Source: Vitrella brassicaformis CCMP3155 (lineage: Eukaryota; Protista; Chromerida). From it: DNA of 64,000 nucleotides. The stretch spans positions 248,001 to 312,000 of the forward strand of contig CDMY01000336.1 in the NCBI GenBank assembly GCA_001179505.1, read 5' to 3'. This document shows positions 7,791 to 38,308 of the stretch, piece after piece. Every line of letters starts with the position of its first letter. Positions within the stretch are counted from its first letter, which is position 1. A model generated the notes under the pieces. That model did no database searches, was not told where the DNA came from, and saw only the letters and a program-made list of their open reading frames with translations. The position numbers and the translations under genes were made by a program.

Positions 7791-8171
7791 CGGTACCACT
7801 GCCGTCAGTTGATGCTCAGCCGCACGAACATCTCAACTCTGATCTGTGTGCATCGAATCACATGACAGTGGGTGTCAACTGACGGATGACATGAGGCAAT
7901 CCAGTGGGTTGGTTTGGATGAAGATCGTCAAGCCATTCATGTCAGTAGGTAGGTTGCTTTGTGTTTTCAACGCACACACACACACGGCACGCAAACCAGC
8001 AGGGGAACATGCCACGCAGAGAGAGAAGGCCAAAGCACAGATGGCAGTCCAGCCACAGACAGCGACCACGTCAGGCATCGCCCAAACCACCAGAGGACAT
8101 CAGTCAGCGAAAACGACAGCTGAGGCAGCGAAGCCTGCCCACACACATACTCCCCCCATCCCTCCCCTCCA

Positions 8172-8226
8172 CCACACCGTCACTCCACCTCCCCCACACC
8201 GTCACTCCACCTCCCCCACACCGTCA
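8172..8226. repeat. 22-bp tandem repeat x2.5 (ccacaccgtcactccacctccc) overlapping the stop codon of ankyrin A
   Basis: Read directly at 8172-8193, 8194-8215 and 8216-8226. Confidence 0.85.
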
Positions 8227-19815: not shown

Positions 19816-19974
19816 CCCTACTCACTGTGCTGACGCCGGAGAGAACGCAAAAGCGGAGGAAAGGCACAGATCGGCTTGAAGCTCGCAAATGGCGAGCTCA
19901 GACAGACCGAAAACGGAGCGACGCAGAGAGCTAAACCCGGCCCGCGCCGTTTGCCGGCTTCATCTCATCATCCG

Positions 19975-20669
19975 ATGGGCGAGGGAGATCTCCACCGCCG
20001 TCGGTTTTGGCGCTGCAATGTGGCCAAGAAGGTGGCTGGAGGGGTGGTGCTGCTGTCCTCCTTCATCAGGCCAGCCAACGGCCTCAGCCTCAGCTTCATC
20101 TTCAGGCCACTGCAGGATGGCTGGAGGCGGCGGAGTCCAACTTCGCATCATGTGAGTCCTGGCGTACCGAGGTTGAGGCGTGCGCCGGCGCGGCTGCGGT
20201 CCCGCATCGTTGCTATGGAGGCGCGGGGCAAGGGCATCGACCTGCTGGAATCCATTGCCCTGTCTGATGATGCCGAAGAGGCACCAAGTGCGTGGGAAAC
20301 GAGTCTGGTCTGTTGGATGGAAGGATCTGTCTGTTTGTTTGTGTGGTTGTCAGATCATTCTGTTCATCGCATAGCTGACCGTGGTGCAGTGCATGAGGCG
20401 CCGATGGAGAGCCACATGGGTGATGAGGAGGTGGAAGAGTCGGAGCCCATCGACTTGGCTGCCGCGGGGGAGGGCGAGATCACTCTCACCAACTCACAGA
20501 GAGAGGTCCGACAGCACACTTTGCACATGAGGCACATGTGTCCAACCTTACCCTTGAGCTCTTTGGTCTTGTTCGTTCGTGTGCAGATAGCTCTTGACAT
20601 GGGTCTCCTCGAGAGGCAGATCAAACACATCCGAGATATCATTGGGTGGGTACATGGGGGGCGGCTCTC

Positions 20670-20700
<31 letters not shown>

Positions 20701-22321
20701 CAACACACAATCATCCCACGCCCGCCTTCATTCAAAGTCGCTGTCTGGTGACATGTCTGTCTGTCGATTGTCAGTGTCAGTGCTTTCGACATCGGCGTCG
20801 AGCTCGTCGACAACCAAAGGATGCAGGTAGGTAACACCAGCCCGCATGAATGAGACGCGGAAATGCACACCGATGAGTGAGTCCTTATCTATCGTGCAGC
20901 ATTTGAATCGTGACTTCCGTGCCAAGGACCGCCCCACTGACATCTTGTCCTTCCGCTGCTTTGACGACATCGAGCCTGGCTCGCTGCCCAAGGTCACCAG
21001 TGCGGAAGACCTGGACCTGGGCGATATATTCATTTCTGCCGGTTGGTCGATCGGCGACAGATAGCAACAAACACACACATAGAAGGGGTGTTCCGTATGC
21101 ATGCCGTGGCCGCGTGTGTGTTTCTGTGGGCTTGCAGAGTATGTGCAGGAGCGGTGTGATGAGGACCGCGCAGAAATGGAGGCGCAGCTCGAGGACAATG
21201 GGGAGTTCGTCAGCACCGAAAGGTGGGTCGATACACTGCAGTACACACACAGAGACAGGAACAGGAGATCAGAGGACGTCTGTTGCTGTGCGCGTTGTGT
21301 GTGAAGGGGTGTGAGTGGCGCGATGGCCAAGACATTTACAGTGAGGGAACGGCTGCCGCTACTCGTCATACACGGCATACTCCACCTACTCGGGTAAGCC
21401 ATCCAGCCGCCCCCCCAACTCATGCGCCGTTGACCTGTCTGCGCGTGTCTGAGTCTGTGTCTGTGTCTGTCGTCCCTCAGTTATGACGACCAGAGTGACT
21501 CAGATTGGTCGATGATGGTCAACCGGGAGGAACAGGTCATCAAACAGTACTCCGAGACACCCATGGGACCCAAGTAGCCGAAACACACACACACACAGAG
21601 CGCACATAGCGCATGCAGAGGAGCACCGATTCCTCGTTTGCGCTGTGTGTGTGTACAGGAGTTCCAAGGCCGGCACGTATGTGGTGGGTGTGGGTACTGA
21701 CATAGTCTTCATCCCCCGCGTCAAGCGGGCCCTCAGCCGTGCCGAGGAGCGCTTCACACGCCGCATCTTCACCGCCCGCGAACACTACATTTACCGCCAG
21801 TTCAGGAAGACCAGGAAGGACCGACGGAACCTCACCGACGACGAGTGGTCAGTCAGTCATGACACACACGGAAAAGGGCAAAGCTTTGCAGCGAATGGAC
21901 GTCCTGCCTGTCCTCCCCATGTGATGTGTGTGCGGCTGCAGGTTGGAGTTGGCGGCGTCGTTTGTGGCCAAGCGGTTTGCCACGAAGGAGGCCGTGTCCA
22001 AGGCCCTCGGCGTGGGGCTGCGCATCATACACCCAAGTCAGTCAGTCAGTCAGCCATATACCTAATGAGACCATCCAACACACTCGCGCACGTGACATGA
22101 CGCGTGCATCTCTCCACCCTGTGTGTGTGTGTGTGTGTGTAGATGGTCTTCGGTTGAAGGACATAGAGGTGTTGAATCGTCCGTCGGGCCAGCCCTATGT
22201 GGAGCTACTCAATGAGGGGCGGCGGAAGGGTATGGCCATGGGCGTCGTGGACGTGGCCGTCAGCCAGGCCGACGAGAAGGAATATGCCGTCGCATTCGCC
22301 ACGGCCACCGGCAGCACCTAG
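19975..22321 (+). CDS. ybeY-acpS: YbeY endoribonuclease fused to AcpS (holo-ACP synthase) with a targeting-like leader
   Basis: YbeY motifs LNRDFRAKDRPTDILSF, LGDIFIS and IHGILHLLG|YDD. AcpS motifs VGVGTDIV, KRFATKEAVSKALG and IEVLNRPSGQP..EYAVAFA. The two are joined in frame by a phase-2 intron at 21574-21658; AcpS has no ATG of its own. Confidence 0.85.
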
Positions 22322-22956: not shown

Positions 22957-25900
22957 TCATTTGGCCACCAGAGTCAGGCTCAGCTGCAGGAACTCACCCT
23001 CCTGACTCAGCGCACTCTTGCTCTCCGTCATCGTATAGTGCGCACGCACTCTTTCGCAGCACCCCCACGCAAACGAGCGCAGGTCACTCAACTTGGCCGC
23101 TCTGTCCTCACCCTTCAACTCATCGGCAGACACCAGCACCTCGTCAATAGTGAGCTGTGACGGCCGGGCTGCCATAGCGCACTCAATGAGCGCCAGCAGG
23201 TCGGCCTTTCTGCAGCATGCCATATCCCCCCCTAGGCCTCCCCTCTCTCCCCTCTGCACCTCAATGTGCTTTATCTGTGCGATTCCCCTCGACCACATCG
23301 GAGGCACGGAACCGGGAAAACCGTGCGATGTGGGAGGCGTGGAAAACGTGACCTCATCCAGCTGCCTCACAGGAAGGAAGCACAGCACCTCACACGCCAG
23401 AGCTAAGCTACACGCACCTCGGAACCACACGGACTTGACCGATGTGAGCGTGCCCGTCAGCCCACTCAGCGCGCTGGGAAACCCACGCAGGTCAGTGGTA
23501 GGGAGGGAGGGAAGCCAGATGATCAAGCGCTCGATTGACGGGAAGCGCCGGATCGGCTGCTGCCGGCCTGGCAGGGCCGGCAGCCAAGTGGGGATGCTCT
23601 CGACCACAGCTGCGGCACTCACGCCGTGCTTGACGCGCACGGTGAGGGTCTTGGCGTGGGCGAAGACGAGCATGTCGCCAACGAGCTTGTGCACAGGTCT
23701 GCCGCCGAGCTTGAGCTCCACCTGACACAGCACAACACACAACGCGGCGCGCCCTGCCAGATGGATCCCTCATGCCTTATCATTCTTTCTCCTCTCACCT
23801 CGGTCGCTTTGGCCGCCAGCTGTGCAGCGATCTGGCCGTACAGCTTGTCGGGCGCTGTGAGCACAGGGGCACTCACACCGTCAGCACTGCTGCAGTCGAT
23901 GGTCATCGAGTTGTCGCGGGTGCGCCACTCGAGATGACAGCCGACCGCCACGGCCCACCACCGGAAGGTCTCTGTCGTGGCTCCGCCCTCCCAACGCCGC
24001 GCACCGATCGACAAACGGGGCACAACGAAGCCCAGCTTCTTGCGCACAGATGCACGCCATGGTCTCGCCCAGTGCGGCTCGAGGGCGTCCTTGAGCTGGT
24101 TCGCGCGGCGACCCACGTCGTCGAAGTCGATCTTCAGGCCGGTGATGGAGGTGATGTGGGGGCACTTGCCGAGGGCGACGGGGAAGTCAGCCCACTCCTG
24201 GTCGGTGAAGATGATGGGCGCGGCCTCCAGCTGCTGTATCTCCGGCGCCGTCTCGAGCACACGCACGACGGCTGTGGAGGGAAAGGGGAAGTCGACGCTC
24301 CGGAGGCTCCTCAGCGATGGAAGGTTCCATCGATTGCTGCAGACAGAGAGTACGCAAGGACCAAATGAACGAACGACAAAATGGAAGCTGGCGTCAATAC
24401 AGACATACATACCCGACGTGATGGAACCACGCCTTCGATCGGATGCTCATGTGCGCCAGCTTGGGGAAGGTGATACGCTGCCGGGGGCTGAACTTGCCGC
24501 CTCCATCCTGCTGGAACGCCATCCAGCCGCCCGATACGTGCAGCTCCGCCAGCGTGTCACTGGCTGCCTCCAGGACCTTCGCCACAGCCACCGACACGCT
24601 GGGCGCCCTCACGTGTGCCGCGTGAATGTTGCCCTGCAGACATACATGAAAGAGGCGCACGAGCACAGCCACCGCCACATCACATCAAATGCATGCATCC
24701 CACTCCCTCTTCCCACCCAGCCACCCACCAGCCGCTGAGATGGCGATGTGGTTTCAGAGAATAGCCATTTGATGTGTGTGTCGTCGCACGCTTCCTCCTC
24801 CAGTTTGTCGTATGTGTCGTACTCGTCCTCGGTCACGACCAAGGTGCGGTAGATGCCGAAGGTCTCGTCGGTGGCCTTGCCGTGGATCTCCCTACTGAGG
24901 TGCGTGAGGCGGCGTGTGGCGTCAATGGTGGTCAAGAAGGAACCCATGTGCCCCATCACGCCCGGGGGCAGACCAGCCAGACAGGGCCGGCCGTACTCCT
25001 GACACACACACACACACAGACAGACAGACAGACACAGTCACGCACAACAGTTTTTGGTGTCTGTTTGCGAATGAAGGCACCTGCCTCACCTTGGCCGCAG
25101 TGTTGCCTGCCCCTCCGTGCTGAGACCCCGACAAACCAGCACCGACCCCACCTGCACACCACGTTCACACACAGAACATTCCATCGAGGCGCTGTCAGGT
25201 GATGCATTCATTCATCGGTGTGACCAGCAGCGAGTTGCAGGCGGAGTTGCTGCAGCCGACTCAGTGGGGGACCCCCTGGGCGGCGCTGGCAGTCTGGCAC
25301 CTCCCAGTCCAACCCACCGAGCTGGTCGAAGATTCGCGATACGGGGTCGCCTGTGTTGCGCTCGCCAGCAGATGTGTTAGCATCCTCCACACGCACGCCT
25401 GAGTGCTTCCCATCAGTGGTCGACGCCTGCAGGTAGGTGCACCAAGATGGGAAGGGAAGGGCCCCATGTGTCTGAGATCGGACGTGCGTACCGCTGTCGA
25501 CTGCTGTAGTGTTGAGTTAGACGGCTGGTCCGAAGGCACCGCGCTACTCGCACGATGGATCAGGCTGAACATCAGGCCGTCATCTTGCCGATGCTGGGAT
25601 GAAATCACAAACACGCATACACACACATACACACACACACACACACACAAGCAGATACCGGTGATCACCATTTGTGGGGTGTGTGTGTGGCGTCGCTGTG
25701 TCGCAATCAATGATCCCCCACCTGCGTGTCTGTTTCCACCGAATGATCCTCCTGCTGTACAGCCGGCTCCACCGAAGCACCCTGACGGTAGGTGGACACA
25801 GACGGACACCACAACCAAACCACCAGGCAGTTGTCTTCTGTTCCCTGTTCGTGCCTTTTTGTCGATTAATGAATGGTTGTGCTGACCTCCTCTGCTCCCT

Positions 25901-26395
25901 GTTTCTGTGCGATGGCGTCTAGCTGCCCCATAGCGTCACCGTATGCGGCCGACAGGCTCGTCTGCATGAGGGCCAGGTTGTCACCCGACAGGCCCTGCAT
26001 GAAACGCACACACACGCAGCCACGCTCTGTCCTCGCTGCCCCGTGGCTGACAGTTTGGTTGATCTTTCCTGTGTGTGCGTGCCTGTGCATCGACTGCGTC
26101 GGTGAGCAGCTGCTCTGCATGGGCGGTCTGGGATCTAAGCTGCATACAAAGCAAGGACGGCATGTATAGAGAGGCGGACATCCTTCCCCTTCCAGCTGTC
26201 TGTGTACGCTCACCGCCCTGAGTTTGTCTACCGCCTCCAGCAACGCGGTCGAACTGTGCTGGCCACCCGCGCCTGCATCAACAGACAAGCGAACCGAATC
26301 CCAGACGACTGCAATGACATGGCCGACACTTCGTATCTGCCCTCACTGTGTTACGTACCTGTGCTATCGGCCGCCAGGATGGCAGCTGTGTCCAT
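22957..26395 (-). CDS. Multi-exon lineage-expanded hypothetical protein (F-box-like segment followed by an LRR-like region)
   Basis: Leader exons MDTAAILAADST|[33 protein letters not shown]-box-like CLAGLPPGVMGHMGSFL, then RWNLPSLRSL, CPHITSITGL and FPSIERLIIW. Ends ..LSLTLVAK*. Exon structure at 25.0-25.4 kb is uncertain. Confidence 0.65.
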
Positions 26396-26870
26396 CACAG
26401 ATGGGGATGGAGGGGACGGCGTGGCGTGGATGCAGCGTTTGCGCGCCTAAGGGACCTAAAGGGTTCAGGGTTCGGGTTTCAGGGTTCGCTTTCAGGGTTC
26501 GGGTTTCGGCGAGCAGAGCCCTGTTGGTGCCTCAGCCTGACTGACGTCATCATCTTCGCCATAGAATCATACCGACGGACGGCAGAGCGGCAGAGCTGAT
26601 TGAGTTGGAGGTGAATGGAGAGTCTGATGTCGGTGTACTGTAGCAGCATCGCATTGATATCAGCGGTACGCAGTAAGCGCACGCCAGACATACCGACGCA
26701 GAGAGCTCAGCACCATCAGACACATGTTGCCCAACATGCTCTCTTCTCTTCTCTTTGGTCCCCCGTTCTCAGGTCGGTGTACGTGCTGCCGTGATAGATC
26801 CATCCATCCATCCGATTGACTGAGTGAGTGGTCGATTTCCTTGCCGGTTGCCACACACGCCGGATCCACC
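26396..26870. promoter_or_regulatory. Putative divergent (bidirectional) promoter region, copy B
   Basis: Lies between ATG 26395 (-) and ATG 26871 (+); homologous to 33575-34085. Confidence 0.45.
26460..26508. repeat. Degenerate telomere-like (GGGTTCA/GGGTTTC) tract
   Basis: agggttcagggttcgggtttcagggttcgctttcagggttcgggtttcgg. Confidence 0.7.
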
Positions 26871-29462
26871 ATGATGGGCCCGCAACAGTACCAAAGGTAT
26901 GCATGGACACGTCAGTCACCAGAACAGCCACACATGACCACATCCATCAAGTCTTGAGAACGGCGGATGATGTTGATGTCCATTTGCTGTTTGTCATGCT
27001 GCAGTGGCCGCAATGTGGTGATGTCTGGTTCATCGGCTGGCAGACCTCTGCCCCTCGGCTGGGTCGGACGCAGCAGGCTCAGTGTTAGGCTCAGTGTTAC
27101 GGCCAGTCTTCCAAGCATACCTGGCGGTTGGAGATGTGGCAGAAGGAACAGGTGGAGGCGCTTGTGTGCGAGGCGGAACGACTGGACCTGGTGCTGGTGG
27201 CGGCGGGCTGCCCCCTCGCATCATCATCCTGGACGAGTCGTCCCCGGCCGACCACCCAGCAATTTACTAGCTGCGGGCATCCTCTCGCGCAGCTTCACCC
27301 GAGTCAGCCAGGTGACGGGCCTCATTCAGCAGCAGGGAGCAGACCCCATTGATGTGCAGCCCCTGCTGCGGGTGAAGGGCCGCACCACGACCCGCTTCGC
27401 CCCCTTTCCGCTGCTGCCCCTGTGCATCGACAACCTCACGGACAACCGCATCCCGTCCATCTGGGCAGCAGACGGCGATGATCGGCGCGTTCCCGTCGCT
27501 CTGCCGCTGTGGCGCACCCGCGGCCTGCAGGAGGGCGTCATGCGGAGCCTGATTGAGGAAGGTGCGGACATCAACGCCATCCCGACCGACGAGGACGGCT
27601 TTGACTGCCCGGGCGCCACGCCCATCCGCGTGGCCATCAAAGCATGCAACGAGAAGGCCTTCCATCTGCTCATGGCAGAGGCTGGGCTGCAGCTGGGGGG
27701 CCGTCAGGTGATGCGGGTTCCATGGACACTGGAGACGGACCGGCCCACCGAGGACCACGAGGCCACCCTGCTGTCCTTCTACCAGCAACTCCTCGATCGC
27801 GCCCCCACCCTCGCAGCCGAGACTGATGCAGGGTATGGCGGCAATCCGGTGCATTGGGTGGCCTTCACCCGTCCCGTGTGGTCCCAGTCCTTCATCGACA
27901 GCTACATCGGCCTGTTGGTGGCCAATGGGGCGGACATGACGGCAGTGGACTACCGTAACGCGACGCCACTGCACTGCGCGGCAGACTGCGGGTCCCACCG
28001 TGGCTGCCTCCCTGTGCCGCCGCCTCACGGCTGCTGACATCAACAGAGGGAGGCTGCACACCTGGTGTCCATGCATTCACCCCAATGACACGCCTCTCGC
28101 TGCTGCTGCCCAATGGCTCGATAAGGACATTCAGCGGCTGGACGACGACACTGCGGAGGCGGCAGACAAGGACAAAGCCACCAGCGAGATTCCCCATCTC
28201 AAGAGCACCATCCGTGTGCTGCTGCAGGCGGGGGCGGACATCGCCCGGCTCCGCACGGACACCGAGCGGGACCGCCGTCGTCGGCGTCTGGTGCTGCCCG
28301 AGTACAAGACGGTGCTCAACGAGGTCCCCATTGCCGCCATGTCGGCCATCAACGCCGCCCTGCGACCTCAGCGCGAGATGGCTGACGCGCTGACCAAGGC
28401 ATTCCACAACGGCACCGCCCAGCAACTCAAGGCCGCCTTCCCCTCATTCGACCCACTCCTCCCCCCCCNNNNNNNNNNNNNNNNNNNNNNNNNNNNNNNN
28501 NNNNNNNNNNNNNNNNNNNNNNNNNNNNNNNNNNNNNNNNNNNNNNNNNNNNNNNNNNNNNNNNNNNNNNNNNNNNNNNNNNNNNNNNNNNNNNNNNNNN
28601 NNNNNNNNNNNNNNNNNNNNNNNNNNNNNNNNNNNNNNNNNNNNNNNNNNNNNNNNNNNNNNNNNNNNNNNNNNNNNNNNNNNNNNNNNNNNNNNNNNNN
28701 NNNNNNNNNNNNNNNNNNNNNNNNNNNNNNNNNNNNNNNNNNNNNNNNNNNNNNNNNNNNNNNNNNNNGCCCCCTCCCCCCCTGCCCCCACACGTCGCCC
28801 CGGTGGCCGCCTGGCAGGACGACGAGACTCCCCTGGCCATCCGGGACATGTCGGCCGTCGCCTGGCGGGTGGCGTCCTTTTTCGTCGACCCATCGGCACT
28901 CGAGCAGACGCCCCGCCCCGTCCACAACGCGACGCTCTTCGGCCGGCGCATCAACAAGGCCATGGAGGTGTTCGTCCGCAGCGCTGTGTCGGCGGCGGGC
29001 AATCAGCAGGTGGTGGGAAGCGGGGGCAGCAACAAGAGGGACAGCCAGGGGGAGCGGGTGCGCCGCCCGCCACTGCAGTGCTTCGTCCTGGGCGGGGCGG
29101 ACGGCCGCAGACTGGGTGTGCGTGAGGTGATCCACAGGGCTCGGCTGGACGAGGCGGCGCAGCACGGCGTGGAGGGGGTGGTCAAGGGCTTTAACACCCA
29201 CCTCGGCGATAGCGACTGCCAGTTCCAGTGGCAGCAGCTGGGGTATGTGGGCAGCGGTGGGGGCTTCGAGTCTCTTGCTGCCGCATTCCAGCCGCCCGCG
29301 GGGCCGAGTGATAGCGAGGCGTCGGACGATAGCAGTGGAGATGACTTAGACGAGGGAGAGGATGGTGACGGTGGCGAGGGGTCGGCCGGTGGTGTTGGCG
29401 ACGTATCTGACGAGGGGGAGGGCCACGGGCATGATGATGATGATATGATGGAGGAAGAATAG
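26871..29462 (+). pseudogene. Ankyrin-family copy B, frameshifted, with a short leader exon and an acidic tail; spans a gap
   Basis: Exon 1 MMGPQQYQ, intron 26897-27004, then ankyrin ORF. A 2-nt loss near 27998 (caccgtggct versus caccgtgtggct in copy A) shifts the frame. Gap at 28469-28768. Ends ..DDDDMMEEE*. Confidence 0.75.
28469..28768. other. Assembly gap (300 N)
   Basis: Run of N flanked by poly-C. Confidence 1.
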
Positions 29463-29787
29463 TAGTGGCCTGGGCTGCAATAACAGGAGGGGTGCTGTCT
29501 TAGTGACGATGGGACGAACAGACGGATGGATGGATGTGTGCATGTGTGACTGCCTGACCGGCTGTGTGGTGTGTGTGAGTGAATGTCTTGTTTGTAATGT
29601 GATGACATAATTAATGGCTCCTTCTTAGCTCCAGCCGGGTCATTTCTCAATCTAGCCCTGTGCCACGGCATGGCATCTACCGCGCACTTGCACACCAAGC
29701 GAAACTCTTGTCGGATGCACGAGAGAATTTTCACCTGTGCATTTCACTGATCGCCACAACGTAAAGACGTCTAGCTGGCAAACTCAC

Positions 29788-30554
29788 TCAACGCCATTGT
29801 CCACCCACTGCCCGCCCGGCCCTCTCTGAGTACTGCCTGTCACGACCCACAGCTGCCCTCCTACCATGCCCCTTGTTAACCACCCCACCACCAGCAGCCC
29901 ATTTCCTGGCCTTCTCCCGCTTCTTCTCCCTGGACCTTGCCTCATGGATCTCGCCCCTCCTTTTGCGCAGCAGCGCCAAAGCGCTCTGAATGACGCTCCT
30001 GTCCCTCTCCCCTGCTGGCCCCCCTGGCGCAGCGACCACCTCGAAGTCATCGATACTGGCTGCATTCATATGGTCAGCTGCATCGGCCGCCTCGGTGCGT
30101 CGCTCCTTCTTGCTGGGCTTGTGGGACGATGCTGATGCTGACGTGTCGCGCTTGCGTTTCCCCCACTGTGTTGTGCCTGGGAGAGGCCGGCTGGTGCTGG
30201 CGTCTGGACCACCGTGCTGTGTGTGGGGGTGGGCTCCGTGGAGTGCCTTGCCAGGTGCCTCGGAGAGGCCGAATGAGGAGGCATAGTGTCCGAGGTGGAT
30301 GGCTCGGGGGTTGAAGAAGGCCTTCAGCTCCTTCTTGTACGTGTGATACGCCCTGCAGAAAGCAGACACACACGCAGCACAGGAATGAGCTATCTGGAGT
30401 GTTGTGTGTCGTGCTGTCATTCCAACACCCACCTGTGTGCCGATACGAATGCTCTGCGGGCTTTGGCGAGGAGGTCGGGGTCGCGGGCCACAGACTTGCA
30501 CACAAACGAGCCGAGAAAAGAGGCCAATCCCTGAAGGATAGATACAACAGACCA

Positions 30555-30586
<32 letters not shown>

Positions 30587-31016
30587 GTGTGTGTGTCCGT
30601 CGTGTGTTGGTCTGCCGCCCTGTCGTGTCGGCTGCTGACTTTGAGTTTGAGTGTCTTGAGGTGTTGTGCCACTTGTGCCTCCTGGAAGAGGTGCAGGATG
30701 GTGAACTCCGAGAGGAGCTTGACGTCCACACGGTGCTGCTTCAGACACTCCACATACCCCACCTCAGATGGCAACAAAAACACCACCGCATTGCCCTGAC
30801 AGACAGACAGATGGACGCAGAATGCCCCGGTTCGCTGCATTTGGCTGACGTCTTTGCCGAGACGGGCAGTGCGCCCCACACGGTGGATGTACTCCTCGAC
30901 CTCCTGCGGCGGGTCATACTGCACAATCCAGTCCACATGGGGCAGATCCAGCCCACGGGCGGCCACATCAGTCGCCAGCAGAATCGCCCGCCTCTGACGC
31001 GTGAAATCAGCCAAGT
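29788..31016 (-). CDS. DDX31: DDX31/Dbp7-type DEAD-box helicase C-terminal part, copy 1 (5' end lost in the gap)
   Basis: [32 protein letters not shown] (motifs V and VI) and [30 protein letters not shown], which is typical of the Dbp7/DDX31 C-terminal extension. Confidence 0.8.
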
Positions 31017-31316
31017 NNNNNNNNNNNNNNNNNNNNNNNNNNNNNNNNNNNNNNNNNNNNNNNNNNNNNNNNNNNNNNNNNNNNNNNNNNNNNNNNNNNN
31101 NNNNNNNNNNNNNNNNNNNNNNNNNNNNNNNNNNNNNNNNNNNNNNNNNNNNNNNNNNNNNNNNNNNNNNNNNNNNNNNNNNNNNNNNNNNNNNNNNNNN
31201 NNNNNNNNNNNNNNNNNNNNNNNNNNNNNNNNNNNNNNNNNNNNNNNNNNNNNNNNNNNNNNNNNNNNNNNNNNNNNNNNNNNNNNNNNNNNNNNNNNNN
31301 NNNNNNNNNNNNNNNN
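31017..31316. other. Assembly gap (300 N)
   Basis: Run of N. Confidence 1.
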
Positions 31317-32908
31317 GGCCACGGGGATGATGATGATATGATGGAGGAAGAATAGTAGTGGCCTGGGCTGCATTCGTAGGAGGGAGGGATGCTGTCTTAG
31401 TGACGGAGGGACGAAGCAGACGGACGGACGGATGGATGGATGTGTGCAGGTGTGACTGACTGACCGGCTGTGTGGTGTGTGTGAGTGAATGTCTTGTGTA
31501 TCATGTGATGACATAATTAATGGCTCTCTCTAAGCTCCAGCCGTGTCATTTCTCAATCTAGCTCTGTGCCACGGCACGGCATCTGCCGCACTTGCACACC
31601 AAGCCACACTCTTGTCTAGCTTTTTCACCTGTGCATTTCACTCATCGCCACAACGCAAAGACGTCTAGCTGGCAAACTAACTCAACGCCATATGTCCACC
31701 CACTACCCGCCCGGCCCTGAGCTCTGAGTGCTGCCTGTCACGACCCACAACCGCCCCCCTCCCATGCCCCTTTTTAACCACCCCACCACCAGCAGCCCAT
31801 TTCCTGGCCTTCTCCCGCTTCTTCTCCCCGGACCTGGCCTCATGGATCTCGCCCCTCCTTTTGCGCAGCAGCGCCAAAGCGCTCTGAATGACGCTCCTGT
31901 CCCTCTCCCCTGCTGGCCCCCCTGGCGCAGCGACCACCTCGAAGTCATCACTGGCTGCATTATGGTCAGCTGCATCGGCCGCCTCGGTGCGTCGCTCCCT
32001 CTTGCTGGGCTTGTGGGACGATGCTGATGCTGACGTGTCGCGCTTGCGTTTCCCCCACTGTGTTGTGCCTGGGACAGGCCGGCTGGTGCTGGCGTCTGGA
32101 CCACCGTGCTGTGTGTGTGGGTGGGCTCCGTGGAGTGCCTTGCCAGGTGCCTCGGAGAGGCCGAATGAGGACGCATAGTGGCCGAGGTGGATCGCTCGGG
32201 GGTTGAAGAAGGCCTTCAGCTCCTTCTTGTACGTGTGATACGCCCTGCAGAAGGCAGACACACATGCAGCACACAGGAATGAGCTGTCTTGAGTGTTGTG
32301 TGTCGTGTTGTGTTGTGTGTCGTGTTGTCATTCCCACGCTCACCTGTGTGCCGATACGAATGCTCTGCGGGCTTTGGCGAGGAGGTCGGGGTCGCGGGCC
32401 ACAGACTTGCACACAAACGAGCCGAGAAAAGAGGCCAATCCCTAAACGATACACCACACCAACACACACACACACACACGTGTGTCCGTTGTGTGCTGGT
32501 CTGCCGCCCTGTCGTGTCGGCTGCTGACTTTGAGTTTGAGTGTCTTGAGGTGTTGCGCCACTTGTGTCTCCTGGAAGAGGTGCAGGATGGTGAACTCCGA
32601 GAGGAGCTTGACGTCCACACGGTGCTGCTTCAGACACTCCACATACCCCACCTCAGATGGCAACAAAAACACCACCGCATTGCCCTGACAGACAGAAAGA
32701 TGGACACAGAATGCCCTCCCTGCTGTGCTGCATCTTGCTGACCTCTTTGCCGAGACGGGCCGTGCGCCCCACACGGTGGATGTACTCCTCGACCTCCTGC
32801 GGCGGGTCATACTGCACAATCCAGTCCACATGGGGCAGATCCAGCCCACGGGCGGCCACATCAGTCGCCAGCAGAATCGCCCGCCTCTGACGCGTGAAAT
32901 CAGCCAAG
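31317..32908. repeat. Diverged tandem copy of 29421-31016 (ankyrin-B tail, spacer and helicase 3' half)
   Basis: Both copies begin ggccacggg(c/g)atgatgatga..gaggaagaatagtagtgg and end gtgaaatcagccaagt, with scattered substitutions and indels between. Confidence 0.9.
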
Positions 32909-33574
32909 TAACCCTCCCTGCACACACAGCGACATGACAGGTGACCATGCAGTGGTGTGGTGGATGTGGTGTGGAGAACGTCGCCTCTTTCACCTGTCAT
33001 GGCGTTCCAGGTTGCCGTGGAGCTTGAACAGCTTCACGTCAGCAAAGACGGGCAGACCCACCATCTCACCCCACTCGGCCTCATCGGTCGCAGCGGCAGC
33101 CTGGTCGCCATCAAGATCCTCGTCGCTCAACTCTTCGGCATCGTCCGTGTCGTCCATGTCGTCCATGTCATCTGCCGCCTTGGCCTTTCCCCTTCGGCCC
33201 ATCTTGGCGAAGAACTTGCGGGCGATGGCCTGCTGCCGCGCATCGCTGACCGGCCGCCTGTCGGGGCGGGTCGCTGCCGATCTGCCCTGGAGAGCCTTGA
33301 GTGACGGCCATCGGATGGTGGGCCCAGCATAGCAAGGATAGCCGGCAGAGAGGCGGACATCCTTCCCCTTCCAGCTGTCTGTGTACGCTCACCGCCCTGA
33401 GTTTGTCTACCGCCTCCAGCAACGCGGTCGAACTGTGCTGGCCACCCGCGCCTGCATCATCAGACAAGCAAAGCGAATCCCAGAAGACTGCAATGACATG
33501 GCCGGCACTTCGTATCTGCCCTCACTGTGTTACGTACCTGTGCTATCGGCATGCATTTCGGCGGAGATTTCCAT
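31677..33574 (-). CDS. DDX31: Chimeric gene: two leader exons plus the C-terminal half of a DDX31/Dbp7 helicase (no DEAD domain)
   Basis: [12 protein letters not shown]|[12 protein letters not shown]|[20 protein letters not shown]|[15 protein letters not shown]|GNAVVF..|GLASF..SAHR|AYHTY..*. All junctions are GT-AG and phase-compatible. Confidence 0.65.
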
Positions 33575-34085
33575 CACAGAGGGGGATGGAGGTGGAGTGA
33601 GGGCTCAGGAGAGGGGAGCGGCGGAGGCAGCGTGGATGCCGCGCTTCCGCGCCTAAAGGGTTCAGGGTTCGGGTTTCAGGGTTCAGTATGCGGACTCGCA
33701 GTGCGGCGAGAAGCTGAGCCCGTTGGTGCCTCAGCCTGACTGACGTCATCATCTTCGCCATAGAATCATACCGACGGACGGCAGAGCGGCAGAGCTGGTT
33801 GAACTGGAGGTGAATGGAGAGTCTGATGTCGGTGTAGCAGCATCGCATTGATATCAGCGGCACGCAGTAAGCGCACCACGCCAGACATACCGACGCAGAG
33901 AGCTCAGCACCATCAGTCCAGCCAGAAAGCGAAACCACCCACACATGTTGCCCAAGAGGCTCTCTTCCCTTTGTTCTCTTGTTCTCAGGTGCACGCACTG
34001 CCGTGATAGATCCATCCATCCATCCGATTGACTGAGTGAGTGGTCGATTTCCTTGCCGGTTCCCACACACCACACCGGATCCACC
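33575..34085. promoter_or_regulatory. Putative divergent promoter region, copy C
   Basis: Lies between ATG 33574 (-) and ATG 34086 (+); homologous to copy B. Confidence 0.45.
33657..33685. repeat. Degenerate telomere-like tract, copy C
   Basis: agggttcagggttcgggtttcagggttca. Confidence 0.65.
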
Positions 34086-35506
34086 ATGATGGACGGCAGC
34101 GATGCGATGAAGCGCAAATGCGACCGCTCCCGGCTGCCGTTTCAAAGCATCGCTGCGGATGAAACTGCCGGGTGCACCAACGGCTACCCCGCGCCCACAG
34201 ACGCACACCCACCGCCACACGGCGGGCCGACGCCACTGACGGACGACGGCACCATGGCTCAGAAGCGGCAGGGTGCGGGTCCCAGCGCGCAGCCGGGTCG
34301 TGTGCTGCTGATCCGCGATTTGCCGCGGGACGTCAACGAGTTGGAGATCAAGGAGGCCTTCTCGCGATTCACCGTGGGGCAGGCACTCAGCGTGTTCCAC
34401 GTCCCGAGTGCTGGACAGACGCTCGTACAGTTTCCGGTATGTGGGAGGAGGGGGAGGGAGGAGAGAGAAGGGAGGAGGGAGGAGGGTGGAAGGAACATTC
34501 TTCATGAACCCTCCCACCATAGATATATCGGTATGTGTCATGTGATCAGGACGGGCCGGCTGCGTCGGCTGCGCTGGCTCAGGTGCGTCAGGGTGGTGTG
34601 GTGATCGGCGGCTGCACCATCCAGGGCGACTACAGCAACGCCGATTGCCGCATCCTGCTCGTCAACGTCACCAATTTGGGCTACCCAGTCGAGATCGACG
34701 CACTGCACCGCATCTTCTCCGCACACGGACCCGTCAAAAAGGTCAGCGACGGACACACACACCACAACAAAGCAGCTTGCCTTCATCTGTGTGTGTGGTT
34801 TCTTATGTGTTGCAGATAGATCTGTTGTCTGGGACGGTGCGCGGGGTGGCGCAGGCGCTGATTCAGTTCGAGAACTTGACTGACGCCGCGCAGGCCGTCA
34901 CACACGTCAACGGACACAACATGTACGACGGATGCAACACCCTGCAGGTATGTACACACGGCATGGCACCACTGACCACCACACAAGATCCACTGGATGG
35001 GTGCAACCAATGTTGGTGCCTTTTCTGCTCTCTCTTCTGCTAGCTGCAGGTTCAGCTCTCTGGCGTGACGATGACGGAGTTATCGGTGGGGGACGGCCCC
35101 AACAAGGGCCGCGACTTCACTATACAACCACCCACCGCACACCCCGCTGGTCAGCCGTTACGCGCACACACCCGATGCTGATGTCGACGTCACTTGTCGT
35201 CTGGTGTGGTGTGGTGTGGTGTGGTGTGGTGTGTCCCTTACGTATGGGTGGCTCTCTGACAGCTCGTGGCGGTGTTAACTCGATGCCCCTGGGCTACTCC
35301 AACTATGCGCCACCATCACCAATGGTACGTAACAGCACAACAAAGACGCGAGACGGAGAGGCCATGTGAGCTCATCTCTCTGTCCTTTTTGTTGGGTCAC
35401 CAGGGCATGCCCCCGCAGGACATGAGTGCGATCGGCGGTCTCACCCCACCTCCCCTGCCGCCCACTACACACCCGCCTCACACAAGGGCCCGCAACAGCA
35501 ACAAAG
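34086..35506 (+). CDS. PTBP: PTB/hnRNP-L-like protein with two RRMs and a Pro-rich tail (3' end uncertain)
   Basis: RRM1 RVLLIRDLPRDVNELEI..QTLVQF. RRM2 RILLVNVTNLGYPVEIDALHRIFSAHGPVKKI..QALIQF..VNGHNMYDGCNTLQVQLS..GRDFT matches the PTB RRM2 pattern. Six GT-AG exons. Confidence 0.8.
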
Positions 35507-35629
35507 GTATACATGGACACGTCAGTCACCAGAACAGCCACACATGACCACATCCATCAAGTCTTAAGAGCGGCGGATGATGTGATGTCCATTTGCTGTT
35601 TGTCGTGCAGCAGTGGCCGCAGTGTGGTT

Positions 35630-37411
35630 ATGTCTGGTTCATCGGCTGGCAGACCTCTGCCCCTCCGCTGGGTCAGACACAGCAGGCTCAACGTTGCCGC
35701 CAACCTTCCAAGCCTGCCACTGGCTGCGGACATTCTCTCGCGCACTTTCACTCGAACCCAGCAGGTGACGGACCTCATTCAGCAGCAGGGAGCCGATCCC
35801 AATGAGCATCCCCAGCTGCGGGTGAAGGGCAGCACCACGCCCCGCTTCGCACCCTATCCGCTCTTGGCGCTGTGCATTGACAACCTCACCGACAACCGCA
35901 TCCCGTCCATCTGGGCAGCAGACGGCGATGGGAGGGACTCTCCCGTCGCTTTGCCGCAGTGGTCGTCACCCGACCTGCAGGAGGGCGTCATGAAGGCACT
36001 CATCGCCGGAGGCGTTGACATCAACGCCATCCCGACCGACGATGCGGGGAGGAGGTGCCTGACCGCCACGCCCGTCCGCGTGGCCATCAGAGCGTGCAAC
36101 GAGACGGCCTTCGGTCTGCTCATGGCAGAGGCTGGGCTGCAGCTGGGGGGCCGTCAGGTGATGCGGCTGCCATCGACACTGGACACGGACCGGGCCACCG
36201 AGGACCACGAGGCCACCCTGCTGTCCTTCTACCGGCAGCTCATTGATCGCGACCCCACCCTCGCAACCGAGACTGATGCAGACAGTGGCGGCAATCCGCT
36301 GCATTGGGTGATCTTCACCCCTCCCGTCTGGTCCCAGGCTTTCATCGACAGCTACATCGACCTGTTGGTGGCCAATGGGGCGGACATGACGGCAGTGGAC
36401 ATCATTGGCGCGACGCCATTGCAGTGTGCGGCAATGTGGGGGTTCCATCGCCTGGCTGCCTCCCTGTGCCGCCGCCTCCCGTCTGCCGACATCAACCGAG
36501 GGCCCCCCAACCGCCCCAACCGCACGCCCCTCTGGTGTGCTGCCCAATCATTATGGCTCGACATTCAGCTGGAGCATAACGACACTGCGGAGGCGGCATC
36601 CAAGGACAACGCCAGAGCCCGGATTCCCCATCTCAAGAGCACCATCCGTGTGCTGCTGGAAGCGGGGGCGGACATCGCCCGGCTGCCCAATGCCACTGAG
36701 GGGGACCGCCGTGCTCGGCATCTGGTGCTGGCCGAGCACACGACGGTGCTCAACGAGGTGCCCCGTGTGGTCATGGCGGCCATCAACGCCGCCCTCGCCC
36801 CTCAGCGCGACCACTCGATGCTGCTCGCCCGTCTGCTGCCCCTGGCGCCCCACCACGACGGCCACCCCACGCACCCATCCCCCTCCAAGCTCTCATTCGG
36901 CCCCCAGGAGGCAGAGGCCATCACCTGGAAGATCGGCTCCTTCCTGCACGAGCCACACACCGCCATGGCGACCGTCGATGAGTACCTGATGGGCGAGTCG
37001 CTGCTGAAGCGCCGTGTGCGTGCGGCCGTGGCGCATTTCGTGACGCAGGCGGCCACACGGACGACCGGCAACCGGGAGGTTGTCGGGGGGACGAGGCACG
37101 TGCAGCAGGAGGAAGGGACGAAGCGCACCAGAGTGACGATTCCGCCCCTGCAGTGCTTTGCTGTCAATGGGGGGCAGGAGGGGGGCGGGCAGCATCGGCG
37201 GCTGGGTGTGCGTGAGGTGGTCCACAGGGCTCGGCTGGACGAGGCGGCGCAGCACGGTGTGGAGGGGGTGGTCAAGGGCTTCAACACCCACCTCGACGAT
37301 AGCGACTGCCAGTTCCAATGGCAGCAGCTGGGGTATATCAACAGGGGGGGGCAGTTCGAGGCACTGCAGATCAGCAGGTGGTGGGCAGCATGGGTATGTT
37401 TGTGGGGCTGA
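35630..37411 (+). CDS. Ankyrin-family copy C (uninterrupted ORF)
   Basis: GNPLHWV, ATPLQCAAMWG..ADIN..RTPLWCAA and LLEAGADIA, plus the family C-terminus RRLGVREVVHRARLDEAAQHG. Confidence 0.9.
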   Translation: MSGSSAGRPLPLRWVRHSRLNVAANLPSLPLAADILSRTFTRTQQVTDLIQQQGADPNEHPQLRVKGSTTPRFAPYPLLALCIDNLTDNRIPSIWAADGDGRDSPVALPQWSSPDLQEGVMKALIAGGVDINAIPTDDAGRRCLTATPVRVAIRACNETAFGLLMAEAGLQLGGRQVMRLPSTLDTDRATEDHEATLLSFYRQLIDRDPTLATETDADSGGNPLHWVIFTPPVWSQAFIDSYIDLLVANGADMTAVDIIGATPLQCAAMWGFHRLAASLCRRLPSADINRGPPNRPNRTPLWCAAQSLWLDIQLEHNDTAEAASKDNARARIPHLKSTIRVLLEAGADIARLPNATEGDRRARHLVLAEHTTVLNEVPRVVMAAINAALAPQRDHSMLLARLLPLAPHHDGHPTHPSPSKLSFGPQEAEAITWKIGSFLHEPHTAMATVDEYLMGESLLKRRVRAAVAHFVTQAATRTTGNREVVGGTRHVQQEEGTKRTRVTIPPLQCFAVNGGQEGGGQHRRLGVREVVHRARLDEAAQHGVEGVVKGFNTHLDDSDCQFQWQQLGYINRGGQFEALQISRWWAAWVCLWG

Positions 37412-38308
37412 GCATCGCCTGACGGCCGTGGTACCGATAGATAGACAGCAGCGAGCGGCGGATAGATTGCACATGCATAGAGGCAGACGGAGGGATGGAT
37501 GGATGGAGGGAGGGAGGGAGGGAGAGAGAGGGCGCAAATTGCTGTCGTAGAAGGCGGGCGTGTTGAGGCGAGTGTGTGGACACCTTCCTCCATCCCCTGC
37601 TTCACTCTCTTCTCGCCTCGTGCGACCAACTGCTTGCTTCCTAGTCGCATGTGTGTGTGCACAGCTTGGTGAATTGTGTGCTGTTTTTCAACCACCGATT
37701 CTGCCTTATATCCGTTGCTTGACAGACACAGCCAGACAGGCAGACAGGCAAGGAGGGAGGGAGGGTGGATGTCTAGTTGGCGCATGGACGGACTGATGGA
37801 GGGTCCTTGATTGATTCATGTGTGTCGGCGTAGCTGCGGACGACTGACTGGGGGGACTGCGTGAGGTGTGGTGTGTACAGGTCGGTCTGTCTGTCTGTCT
37901 GTCTGTGTGTATACGGGGTGGCCGACCAGGTAGCTGGCTGGCTGGGTGCTTTGTTTGGCCAGCCGCCGCGGCTCATGTCGGTCGGCAACCTTATTCGTGT
38001 CATCCATCGCTGCGTGCAGCTGTGTATGTATGGGTGGTGCTCTGACTGAGGCGGGTGGGTGGAAGACCCCTCCTTGATGTAGCTAGCTAACGCGCCACTT
38101 GTACCATGTGGCTGCTTCAGATGGCATCTTTGTTTGCACCCATTGATCGACCAAAACAGAGAGGGTCTCACTCTACTCACGACATGAAGCTTGTTTCATC
38201 CATCCATCCGTCCGTCCACGCCACAAGCGCATGAAGGAAGCGTCAGGCACATCACGCCACACCGGCGTCATGTCATTGAAGACAACACCACCTTGGCTAA
38301 GCCCCTCC

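What the first reader, a model, noticed from the sequence alone, without database searches (positions are those of the whole stretch)
26168..34092. Duplicated leader-exon/divergent-promoter module whose leader exons splice onto different genes
26168-26877 and 33347-34092 are clearly homologous, and homology resumes in the downstream ankyrin genes. The module holds two minus-strand leader exons (M..ADST|[21 protein letters not shown]), a telomere-like tract, a spacer and a plus-strand ATGATGG. The left breakpoint (agagaggcggacatcc) lies inside the intron after leader exon 2. In copy B the leader splices to an F-box/LRR-like family gene; in copy C it splices in frame to half of a DDX31 helicase. 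This looks like a portable expression cassette travelling with an expanded ankyrin family and creating new chimeric genes on its far side (inference).
Basis: partly seen in the sequence, partly recalled or inferred. Interest (0 to 1): 0.8.

Follow-up and report, generated by a model that had tools for sequence, protein, structure and literature searches.

The report
Local duplication making a chimeric transcript
In the alga Vitrella brassicaformis a promoter plus the first two exons of one gene were copied once, a few kilobases away, next to a beheaded copy of a DDX31-type helicase gene, giving a chimeric RNA; this is an ordinary by-product of local duplication, not a mobile expression cassette, and part of the region is probably misassembled.

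Summary
The duplication is real at the stated coordinates, and homology resumes in the ankyrin genes. The module exists only twice in the 72.7-Mb genome, although the ankyrin family gives over 60 hits. It has no terminal repeats.

- **Copy B:** the two leader exons are the normal first coding exons of the left-hand gene (CEM03216.1). An RNA contig confirms this.
- **Copy C:** the module abuts, within 9 to 25 bases, the middle of an exon of a 5'-truncated helicase copy. The full-length parent lies about 37 kb downstream on the same scaffold.
- **In-frame splice in C:** The only RNA contig reads straight through that stretch, so the leader reading frame is out of frame. The helicase fragment has its own 400-codon frame.
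- **Gap 31017-31316:** it is flanked by two 91%-identical copies of the same 1.6 kb. About 31317-32811 is most likely parent-locus sequence pulled in during gap closing, so the window probably holds one helicase fragment.
- **Gap 28469-28768:** it probably hides only about 5-15 bases.

Verdict: a segmental duplication junction creating a transcribed chimeric fragment, which is a known kind of event. A side lead is a telomere-like 20-mer next to both RNA starts that recurs at 28 dispersed sites.

The parts
26168..26877 (.). Module copy B: gene X leader exons, promoter region, start of the plus-strand gene
   Evidence: homologous to 33347-34092; only two copies in the genome.
33347..34092 (.). 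Module copy C. B-like similarity probably starts at about 33331.
26359..26436 (-). B leader exon 1: coding part 26359-26395 (MDTAAILAADST), with 5' UTR reaching at least 26436
   Evidence: RNA contig L074 nt 1-75 matches 26436-26362 at 100%. It is the N-terminus of CEM03216.1 = P0145.
26214..26272 (-). B leader exon 2 (59 nt, identical to the C copy)
   Evidence: L074 nt 193-254; P0145.
26083..26139 (-). Gene X exon 3, the natural splice partner of leader exon 2. It is followed by a GC-AG intron.
   Evidence: L074 nt 255-311 at 100%; sequence.
22960..26139 (-). Body of gene X (826 aa, no Pfam domain, Vitrella-specific family)
33538..33647 (-). C leader exon 1: coding part 33538-33574 ([12 protein letters not shown]), with 5' UTR reaching at least 33647
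   Evidence: RNA contigs L075 nt 1-111 and L074 nt 86-196, both 100%.
33393..33451 (-). C leader exon 2
   Evidence: L075 nt 112-170.
33287..33392 (-). The RNA contig retains it. It contains the duplication junction.
   Evidence: L075 nt 108-569 is colinear with 33454-32993 at 100%. An in-frame TGA lies at the unspliced donor.
33322..33346 (.). Duplication junction. Helicase-derived sequence ends at 33321, B-like sequence is certain from 33347 and probable from 33331.
32994..33321 (-). Truncated helicase exon a. The parent exon starts about 55 nt further upstream with the motif IV region. The ATG of the fragment's own 400-codon frame lies inside this exon.
32743..32917 (-). Helicase exon b (motifs V and VI)
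   Evidence: Pfam Helicase_C, E = 5.7e-18.
29421..31016 (-). Helicase 3' part, 'copy 1', contiguous with ankyrin B. It is probably the true 3' part of the truncated gene.
   Evidence: RNA contig L075 nt 742-1613 is 100% this version, against 95.5% to copy 2 in the last exon. The same holds for P0001 and P0122.
31317..32811 (-). Helicase 'copy 2' 3' part, probably parent-locus sequence misplaced here
   Evidence: 31317-31786 is 100% identical to C336:320871-321340 and dovetails with the parent-locus gap, which lacks exactly the rest. The parent-locus model P0146 lacks this part.
31017..31316 (.). Assembly gap. Its flanks are paralogous copies of one segment, not continuous sequence.
28469..28768 (.). 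Assembly gap in a C-rich linker of ankyrin B. About 5-15 nt are probably missing. The frame across it cannot be tested.
   Evidence: Colinearity with copies A and D, which have 143 nt between anchors against 135 nt of read sequence in B.
26460..26507 (.). Telomere-like (AGGGTTC)n tract in B, holding the 20-mer AGGGTTCGGGTTTCAGGGTT
33657..33686 (.). Telomere-like tract in C, with the same 20-mer
26542..26549 (.). TGACGTCA palindrome in a fully conserved block. The C copy is at 33741-33748.
   Evidence: Read from the sequence; a promoter role is inferred.
26871..29270 (+). Ankyrin gene B. It lacks the PTB-like segment, has a 2-nt deletion at 28000/28001 and contains a gap.
34086..35504 (+). PTB-like exons present only in copy C
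   Evidence: RRM_8 and RRM_1, both weak and below the curated cut-offs.
35630..37408 (+). Ankyrin gene C, part of an open 661-codon frame (35426-37408)

Best explanation
This is a local segmental duplication inside an ankyrin-gene cluster of Vitrella brassicaformis scaffold C336. The copied block starts in intron 2 of gene X (CEM03216.1). It runs through X's two first exons and the roughly 430-bp divergent promoter region into the head of the neighbouring plus-strand PTB-like/ankyrin gene. In copy B the leader exons are simply X's own 5' exons. In copy C the same block is joined head-to-tail, with at most 9-25 unassigned bases, to the middle of an exon of a 5'-truncated paralogue of a DDX31/Dbp7-type helicase. 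The full-length parent of that helicase sits next to another ankyrin copy about 37 kb downstream. Both promoter copies fire. From copy C the RNA splices leader intron 1 and then reads through the junction into the helicase fragment. The leader frame (106 codons) ends out of frame. The fragment keeps its own frame of 400 codons covering the second RecA-like domain and the C-terminal extension. The chimera is therefore a by-product of where the duplication breakpoints fell. It is a transcribed gene fragment, probably a pseudogene and possibly a newborn gene. Shown here: the homologies, copy number, junction, parent gene and RNA structure. Inferred: the order of events, that the window holds one helicase fragment and not two, and that the fragment has no function.
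For: - **Copy number:** two module copies in 72.7 Mb against 63 ankyrin-family matches. Ankyrin copies A and D have no module upstream.
- **Leader uniqueness:** the leader-exon reading frame has no other relative in the genome.
- **Junction:** C matches the parent helicase up to 33321, in the middle of the parent exon that encodes ...YHHELLS|TIRWPSLK.... C matches B from 33347, probably from 33331.
- **Parent gene:** it carries the Q motif, GSGKT, DEAD and SAT plus the same acidic exon.
- **RNA for gene X:** L074 shows exon 2 spliced to X exon 3 and all later X exons at 100%. The deposited X protein starts with the B-type leader.
- **RNA for copy C:** L075 shows C exon 1, then exon 2, then unspliced read-through into helicase exon a, then spliced helicase exons. 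The matching transcript-derived proteins are P0001 (MMETSP, 400 aa, 'complete') and P0122.
- **No transposon signs:** no terminal inverted repeats at the block ends and no Rfam family in the region.
- **Recombination in the cluster:** the ankyrin copies are patchy mosaics of one another.
Against: - The deposited gene model (P0121) does use the in-frame splice, and a minor spliced isoform cannot be excluded from one RNA contig.
- After ankyrin C there is no helicase 3' part. A single simple tandem duplication therefore does not explain everything, and further rearrangement or template switching must be assumed.
- The RNA contigs come from short reads and are themselves assemblies. L074 joins the C-type exon 1 to gene X across a 72-nt stretch that is identical in both copies, so that link is not phased.
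- Two sites in helicase exon b (32761, 32743) follow copy 2 in the RNA, while exon c onward follows copy 1.
Confidence: 0.8

Rival explanations
1. Portable expression cassette: a mobile promoter/leader unit that moves with ankyrin genes and captures new downstream genes.
For: Two copies have different left-hand partners. Both copies are transcribed.
Against: - Only two copies exist, 7.2 kb apart as scaffolded.
- More than 60 ankyrin-family hits lack the module.
- There are no terminal repeats or transposon-like ends.
- One end is continuous with gene X's own intron, and the other continues into the ankyrin gene.
Confidence: 0.03
2. The chimera is a working new gene. Leader exon 2 is spliced at 33392/33287 in frame to the helicase C-terminal half, as in the deposited model, giving a leader-RecA2 protein.
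For: - The splice is in frame, and the annotators' predictor chose it (P0121).
- The donor GTGAGC is the same one that works in copy B.
- The fragment's exons are intact and 97-100% identical to the parent.
Against: - The proposed acceptor lies inside what is exon sequence in the parent gene.
- The only RNA contig retains the stretch.
- A word search over the leader and exon a (candidates of 425-1351 aa) found no transcript-derived protein with that join.
- The near-identity to the parent is also what a young, unconstrained copy would show.
Confidence: 0.12
3. The scaffold is right as written: two real tandem helicase C-halves lie between ankyrin B and module C, making three helicase copies in the genome.
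For: - The two versions differ by 9%, so they are not one sequence read twice.
- Tandem repeats often break short-read assemblies at just such places.
Against: - The homology ends exactly at both gap edges.
- 31317-31786 is 100% identical to the parent locus and dovetails with that locus's own gap. That gap lacks exactly the part present here.
- As scaffolded, the parent gene model has no C-terminal part (P0146) and the window model has it twice (P0121).
- At every position only two sequence versions exist among the three places.
- The RNA links the C-side 5' part to the copy-1 3' part.
- The assembly used iterative gap closers (PMC4501334).
Confidence: 0.2
4. Compatible with the main explanation: the C promoter also serves as a distal alternative promoter of gene X, with C exon 1 and 2 spliced over 5-7 kb to X exon 3.
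For: L074 reads C-type exon 1, then exon 2, then X exon 3 in one uninterrupted stretch at 100%. A B-type exon 1 piece is attached only through 10 N. P0123 starts with the C-type leader.
Against: The last 13 nt of exon 1 plus all of exon 2 (72 nt) are identical in B and C, so a short-read assembler cannot phase exon 1 with exon 3.
Confidence: 0.25

Closest known systems
Chimeric genes or transcripts formed at the junction of tandem or segmental duplications (well described in Drosophila and mammals; cited from general knowledge, not from a tool)
   Same: The duplication breakpoints fall inside two genes. The new junction places the promoter and 5' exons of one gene in front of the 3' part of another. 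Both intact parents persist, and the product is transcribed.
   Different: The structure is not a clean two-copy tandem. The helicase part comes from a unit (ankyrin plus helicase) whose intact copy lies 37 kb away, and the ankyrin copies are mosaics. The RNA seen does not fuse the two reading frames.
Gene-capturing transposons (Pack-MULEs, Helitrons)
   Same: They also carry gene fragments to new places and create chimeric transcripts.
   Different: Here there are no terminal inverted repeats or Helitron-type ends, no multi-copy family, and the copy sits next to its source.
Bidirectional (divergent) promoters
   Same: A stretch of roughly 430 bp lies between the minus-strand RNA starts and a plus-strand ATG. 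It holds conserved blocks, including a TGACGTCA palindrome.
   Different: Only minus-strand transcription is shown here. Plus-strand starts were not found in the data I could reach.
Plant 'telo-box' promoter elements (short interstitial telomere-like motifs near transcription starts; cited from general knowledge)
   Same: A telomere-variant tract lies 10-25 nt upstream of both RNA contig starts. The true telomere repeat is TTTAGGG. The core 20-mer recurs at 28 dispersed sites against 0 for the control.
   Different: The motif is longer and different in sequence, is untested in chromerids, and was not checked for position relative to genes at the other sites.
DDX31/Dbp7 DEAD-box helicases
   Same: The fragment has Helicase_C and the CTE_SPB4 (PF13959) extension. 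Its best named relatives are DDX31/DBP7.
   Different: The window copy lacks the whole first RecA-like domain (Q motif, motifs I to III) and half of the motif IV exon.

Membership tests
Segmental duplication with a chimeric junction | Two homologous copies of a block with defined ends | tested here: met
   26168-29270 against 33347-37360, with one 1.39-kb indel.
Segmental duplication with a chimeric junction | A novel junction that joins sequence from two different parental contexts | tested here: met
   parent-helicase-like up to 33321, gene X intron-like from 33331-33347.
Segmental duplication with a chimeric junction | Intact parental genes exist | tested here: met
   Gene X is intact and expressed. 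The full N-terminal half of the helicase is at C336:318.6-320.6 kb. Its C-terminal part is interrupted by an assembly gap.
Segmental duplication with a chimeric junction | Transcript crossing the junction | tested here: met
   L075 is colinear across 33451-32994 at 100%.
Mobile element or portable cassette | Multiple dispersed copies | tested here: not met
   Two adjacent copies only.
Mobile element or portable cassette | Terminal inverted repeats, target-site duplication or Helitron-type ends | tested here: not met
   One search found no terminal inverted repeats. The ends are continuous with flanking gene sequence.
DDX31/Dbp7 DEAD-box helicase (for the window fragment) | C-terminal RecA-like domain with motifs V and VI plus the CTE_SPB4 extension | tested here: met
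DDX31/Dbp7 DEAD-box helicase (for the window fragment) | N-terminal RecA-like domain (Q, I, Ia, Ib, II = DEAD, III = SAT) | tested here: not met
   Absent from the window copy. Homology to the parent stops at 33321. The domain is present only in the parent locus.
Bidirectional promoter | Divergent transcription starts within about 1 kb | tested here: inconclusive
   Minus-strand RNA contigs start at 26436 and 33647. No plus-strand transcript was retrieved.
Spliced-leader (trans-splicing) gene | Many tandem SL RNA genes, with the leader joined to many mRNAs | tested here: not met
   There are two copies. The leader is coding, is joined in cis by ordinary GT-AG introns, and is found on no other protein.

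The most novel reading that the evidence does not exclude
The duplication has produced a newborn gene. The copied promoter of gene X drives an RNA whose 400-codon frame encodes only the second RecA-like domain and the C-terminal extension of a DDX31/Dbp7 helicase. That product might act as a regulator or competitor of the full-length ribosome-biogenesis helicase. The leader would act as an upstream reading frame or, in a minor isoform, be fused in frame.
Probability: 0.15. Interest if true: 0.45.

Novelty: new member of a known kind. Interest (0 to 1): 0.25.

Why it matters
- **Explains the observation:** the striking duplicated leader is ordinary duplication-junction biology, so it should not be pursued as a new kind of mobile expression unit.
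- **Flags reference errors in the Vitrella genome:** CEM03218.1 carries the helicase C-terminal half twice, across a gap. The DDX31-type helicase model at the parent locus (P0146) is cut off at a gap. About 1.5 kb is probably placed at the wrong locus.
- **Gives a documented example:** this is an RNA-supported case of how duplications in a multigene cluster of a chromerid create chimeric transcripts.
- **Leaves one testable lead:** a telomere-like 20-mer lies next to both RNA starts and recurs at 28 dispersed sites.

Tried and rejected
- **Inverted 41-kb block.** I considered that the whole block between the two gaps (window 31017-31316 and C336:320568-320867) is inverted in the scaffold, because both pairs of gap edges dovetail. 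I dropped it because the 98-nt overlap is identical in all three helicase pieces. Misplacement of about 1.5 kb explains the same facts more simply.
- **Word search with the 158-codon open frame over leader exon 2 and X exon 4:** no hit. The length window excluded the real proteins.
- **Exact-pattern scan of JGI contigs for leader exon 2:** nothing.
- **Exact look-ups of two possible ankyrin C products:** nothing, so plus-strand transcription stays untested.
- **Rfam scan of 25000-38000:** only sub-threshold hits on an (AC)n run.
- **Flanking homology at six other sites of the telomere-like motif:** none found, so the motif is a stand-alone element.
- **Joined spliced models:** I did not search any model of my own. 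Exons were searched by reference, and all full-length spliced sequences used here are database entries (P0001, P0121-P0123, P0145, P0146).
Full report
**Organism and setting**

The window is C336:248001-312000 of a 72,700,666-bp assembly in 1064 scaffolds. That is the published size of the Vitrella brassicaformis CCMP3155 assembly (PMC4501334). Proteins retrieved from the region carry Vitrella accessions. The published assembly was built from short reads, scaffolded with short inserts, and closed with GapFiller and IMAGE.

- 26168-26877 and 33347-34092 align at 83% over 762 columns, and an ungapped 246-nt block reaches 93%.
- Homology resumes at 26876-27081 / 35486-35690 (94%).
- It then continues through the ankyrin genes: 27266-28376 / 35719-36810 at 82%, and 29094-29270 / 37182-37360 at 88%.
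- Copy C carries 1393 extra bases of PTB-like exons (34093-35485). Copy B lacks them cleanly, as another note of this scan already recorded.

Elements of the module, in order:
- Two minus-strand exons: 26359-26395 and 26214-26272 in B, 33538-33574 and 33393-33451 in C.
- A 7-nt-period telomere-like tract.
- A conserved spacer with a TGACGTCA palindrome.
- The plus-strand ATGATGG.

**Copy number**

Whole-genome searches with either copy find only these two. A six-frame search with the leader reading frame also finds only these two. The ankyrin body gives 63 matches on many scaffolds, seven of them on C336. Ankyrin copies A (7770-9968) and D (C336:321491-323184) have no module upstream. No inverted terminal repeats mark the block.

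**Copy B is the native 5' end of a gene**

- A profile search with the last exon of the left-hand gene returned an 826-residue protein.
- Its cluster holds the deposited Vitrella protein CEM03216.1. That protein begins with the B-type leader exon 1 and exon 2, followed by LRSQTAHAEQ....
- A 4787-nt intron-free contig from a JGI transcriptome sample (L074) matches exon 2, exon 3 (26083-26139) and all later exons at 100%.
- It also confirms a GC-AG intron after exon 3.
- Its first 75 nt are the B-type 5' UTR and exon 1, starting at 26436.
- After 10 N it continues with the C-type 5' UTR and exon 1, starting at 33647.
- The last 13 nt of exon 1 and all of exon 2 are identical in B and C. The join of the C-type exon 1 to gene X is therefore not phased.
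- Gene X has no Pfam domain. 'F-box/LRR-like' is not supported.

**Copy C abuts a beheaded helicase copy**

- The sequence left of module C encodes the C-terminal RecA-like domain of a DEAD-box helicase (Helicase_C, E = 5.7e-18). Its best named relatives are DDX31/DBP7, and it has the CTE_SPB4 extension.
- A genome search found a further helicase copy just beyond the window's end, at C336:320067-321340 in opposite orientation, next to ankyrin D.
- That locus carries the whole N-terminal half, upstream from about C336:318.6 kb: Q motif, GSGKT, DEAD and SAT.
- It also carries the same unusual acidic exon.
- Similarity between C and this parent stops at window 33321. That point is inside the parent exon encoding ...VFLSSCDSVDYHHELLS|[14 protein letters not shown]....
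- B-like sequence is certain from 33347 and probable from 33331 (AGCAAGGA in both).
- C is therefore a direct join of helicase mid-exon sequence to intron 2 of gene X. In B this breakpoint lies about 10-25 nt from the exon 3 acceptor.

**What the RNA does in C**

- The 1613-nt RNA contig L075 starts at 33647 and removes leader intron 1.
- It then runs unspliced from exon 2 through the junction to the end of helicase exon a (33451-32994, 100%). After that it splices the remaining helicase exons normally.
- In it the leader frame runs 106 codons and stops out of frame.
- The helicase-fragment frame starts at an internal ATG and is preceded by an in-frame TGA in the unspliced donor. It runs 400 codons.
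- This equals the MMETSP protein P0001, labelled 'complete'.
- A search over the leader and exon a found no transcript-derived protein with the in-frame join.
- The JGI and MMETSP entries may derive from the same reads, so I count them as one line of RNA evidence.

**The gaps**

Gap 31017-31316:
- 29421-31016 and 31317-32909 are two versions (91%, 152 differing columns) of the same helicase segment. Each ends exactly at the gap.
- The last 98 nt before the gap are identical in both versions and in the parent locus.
- The first 470 nt after the gap (31317-31786) are 100% identical to the parent locus. There they begin 3 nt from that locus's own 300-N gap.
- That gap lacks precisely the equivalent of 31787-32811.
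- As scaffolded, the parent model loses its C-terminal part (P0146), while the window model has it twice (P0121).
- At no position do the three places show more than two sequence versions.
- The RNA links the C-side 5' part to the copy-1 version from exon c to the 3' end. It matches copy 1 at 100% and copy 2 at 95.5% in the last exon.
- My reading, at about 0.7: the window holds one truncated helicase, made of 33321 to about 32812 joined to about 30918-29421.
- On the same reading, about 31317-32811 is parent-locus sequence recruited during gap closing. The real B-to-C spacing would then be about 5.3 kb, not 7.2 kb.
- Caveat: two exon b sites (32761, 32743) follow copy 2 in the RNA. They sit in a 60-nt variable island between exact repeats of 148 and 129 nt, which neither short-read assembly could phase.

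Gap 28469-28768:
- It lies in a C-rich linker of ankyrin B.
- Copies A and D have 143 nt between anchors where B has 135 nt of read sequence. Only about 5-15 nt are likely to be missing.
- The frames on the two sides differ, and continuity of the frame cannot be tested.

**History (inferred)**

B's left part is C-like (93-94%). Its ankyrin and 3' flank are most often closest to D (89-96% in many 200-nt windows). The ankyrin copies are patchy mosaics of one another. Ankyrin B has a 2-nt deletion at 28000/28001 that A, C and D lack. The junction in C is the kind of head-to-tail join produced by a tandem or template-switching duplication. The duplicated block would have run from X intron 2 through the module and an ankyrin gene into the convergent helicase. 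Later deletion (the PTB-like segment in B), conversion and rearrangement must be added, because no helicase follows ankyrin C. I cannot order these events.

**Comparison with known systems and verdict**

The closest known case is chimeric transcript formation at a segmental-duplication junction. The features tested here are met. Transposon-type capture and spliced-leader genes fail their defining tests. This is a real feature, a new example of a known kind, and of modest interest.

**Side observation**

Both RNA contigs start 10-25 nt downstream, on the minus strand, of the telomere-like tract. The core 20-mer AGGGTTCGGGTTTCAGGGTT occurs 11 times exactly and 28 times with at most one mismatch across many scaffolds. 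The reversed control occurs 0 times. Six of the other sites show no flanking homology. The true telomere repeat is TTTAGGG at scaffold ends.

Noticed in passing
window 26467-26486 and 33664-33683; also 26 other sites, e.g. C263:42028, C327:71748, C344:9205, C831:249250: The telomere-like 20-mer AGGGTTCGGGTTTCAGGGTT occurs 11 times exactly and 28 times with at most one mismatch in the genome, against 0 for the control. Six other sites show no flanking homology. In both modules it lies just upstream of the RNA contig starts, so it may be a promoter element.
   Followed up: partly
C336:318640-321340 (L039 6640-9340), gap at C336:320568-320867: The full-length DDX31/Dbp7-type helicase gene is interrupted by a 300-N gap that should hold about 1.0 kb. 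Its deposited model (P0146, 556 aa) is cut off after motif V and ends in an artificial exon.
   Followed up: partly
window 28000/28001: Ankyrin B has a 2-nt deletion relative to copies A, C and D, which shifts its frame. It is either a decaying copy or a base-calling error.
   Followed up: partly
window 26871-26896 versus 34086-34092 and 35486-35504: The 1393-bp PTB-like segment is absent from B with a GG overlap at the join. In B this leaves a 26-nt first exon whose ATG is in frame with the ankyrin frame after splicing. In C the PTB-like frame runs out of frame into the ankyrin exon and would stop at about 35765. PTB-like paralogues lie at C336:116332, C336:146653 and C387:5494-6958.
   Followed up: partly
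window 26081-26082 (minus strand): The intron after gene X exon 3 is GC-AG, as confirmed by RNA contig L074.
   Followed up: yes
window 19908-22036 (L074 nt 3454-4787): The same RNA contig continues into a spliced, convergent plus-strand gene with ten exon blocks (e.g. 21656-21849, 21476-21574, 20895-21041) and a 503-residue frame. This gives transcript support for exon borders in the region of the YbeY-AcpS note (21481-21720).
   Followed up: no
window 7770-9968, 27266-29270, 35719-37460; C336:321491-323184: The four ankyrin copies are patchy mosaics. Pairwise identity swings between about 75% and 96% in neighbouring 200-nt windows, which suggests repeated gene conversion in this cluster.
   Followed up: partly
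scaffold ends, e.g. C20:1-233, C292:4-101, C539:1-134: Canonical TTTAGGG telomere arrays sit at many scaffold ends (366 pattern matches).
   Followed up: no
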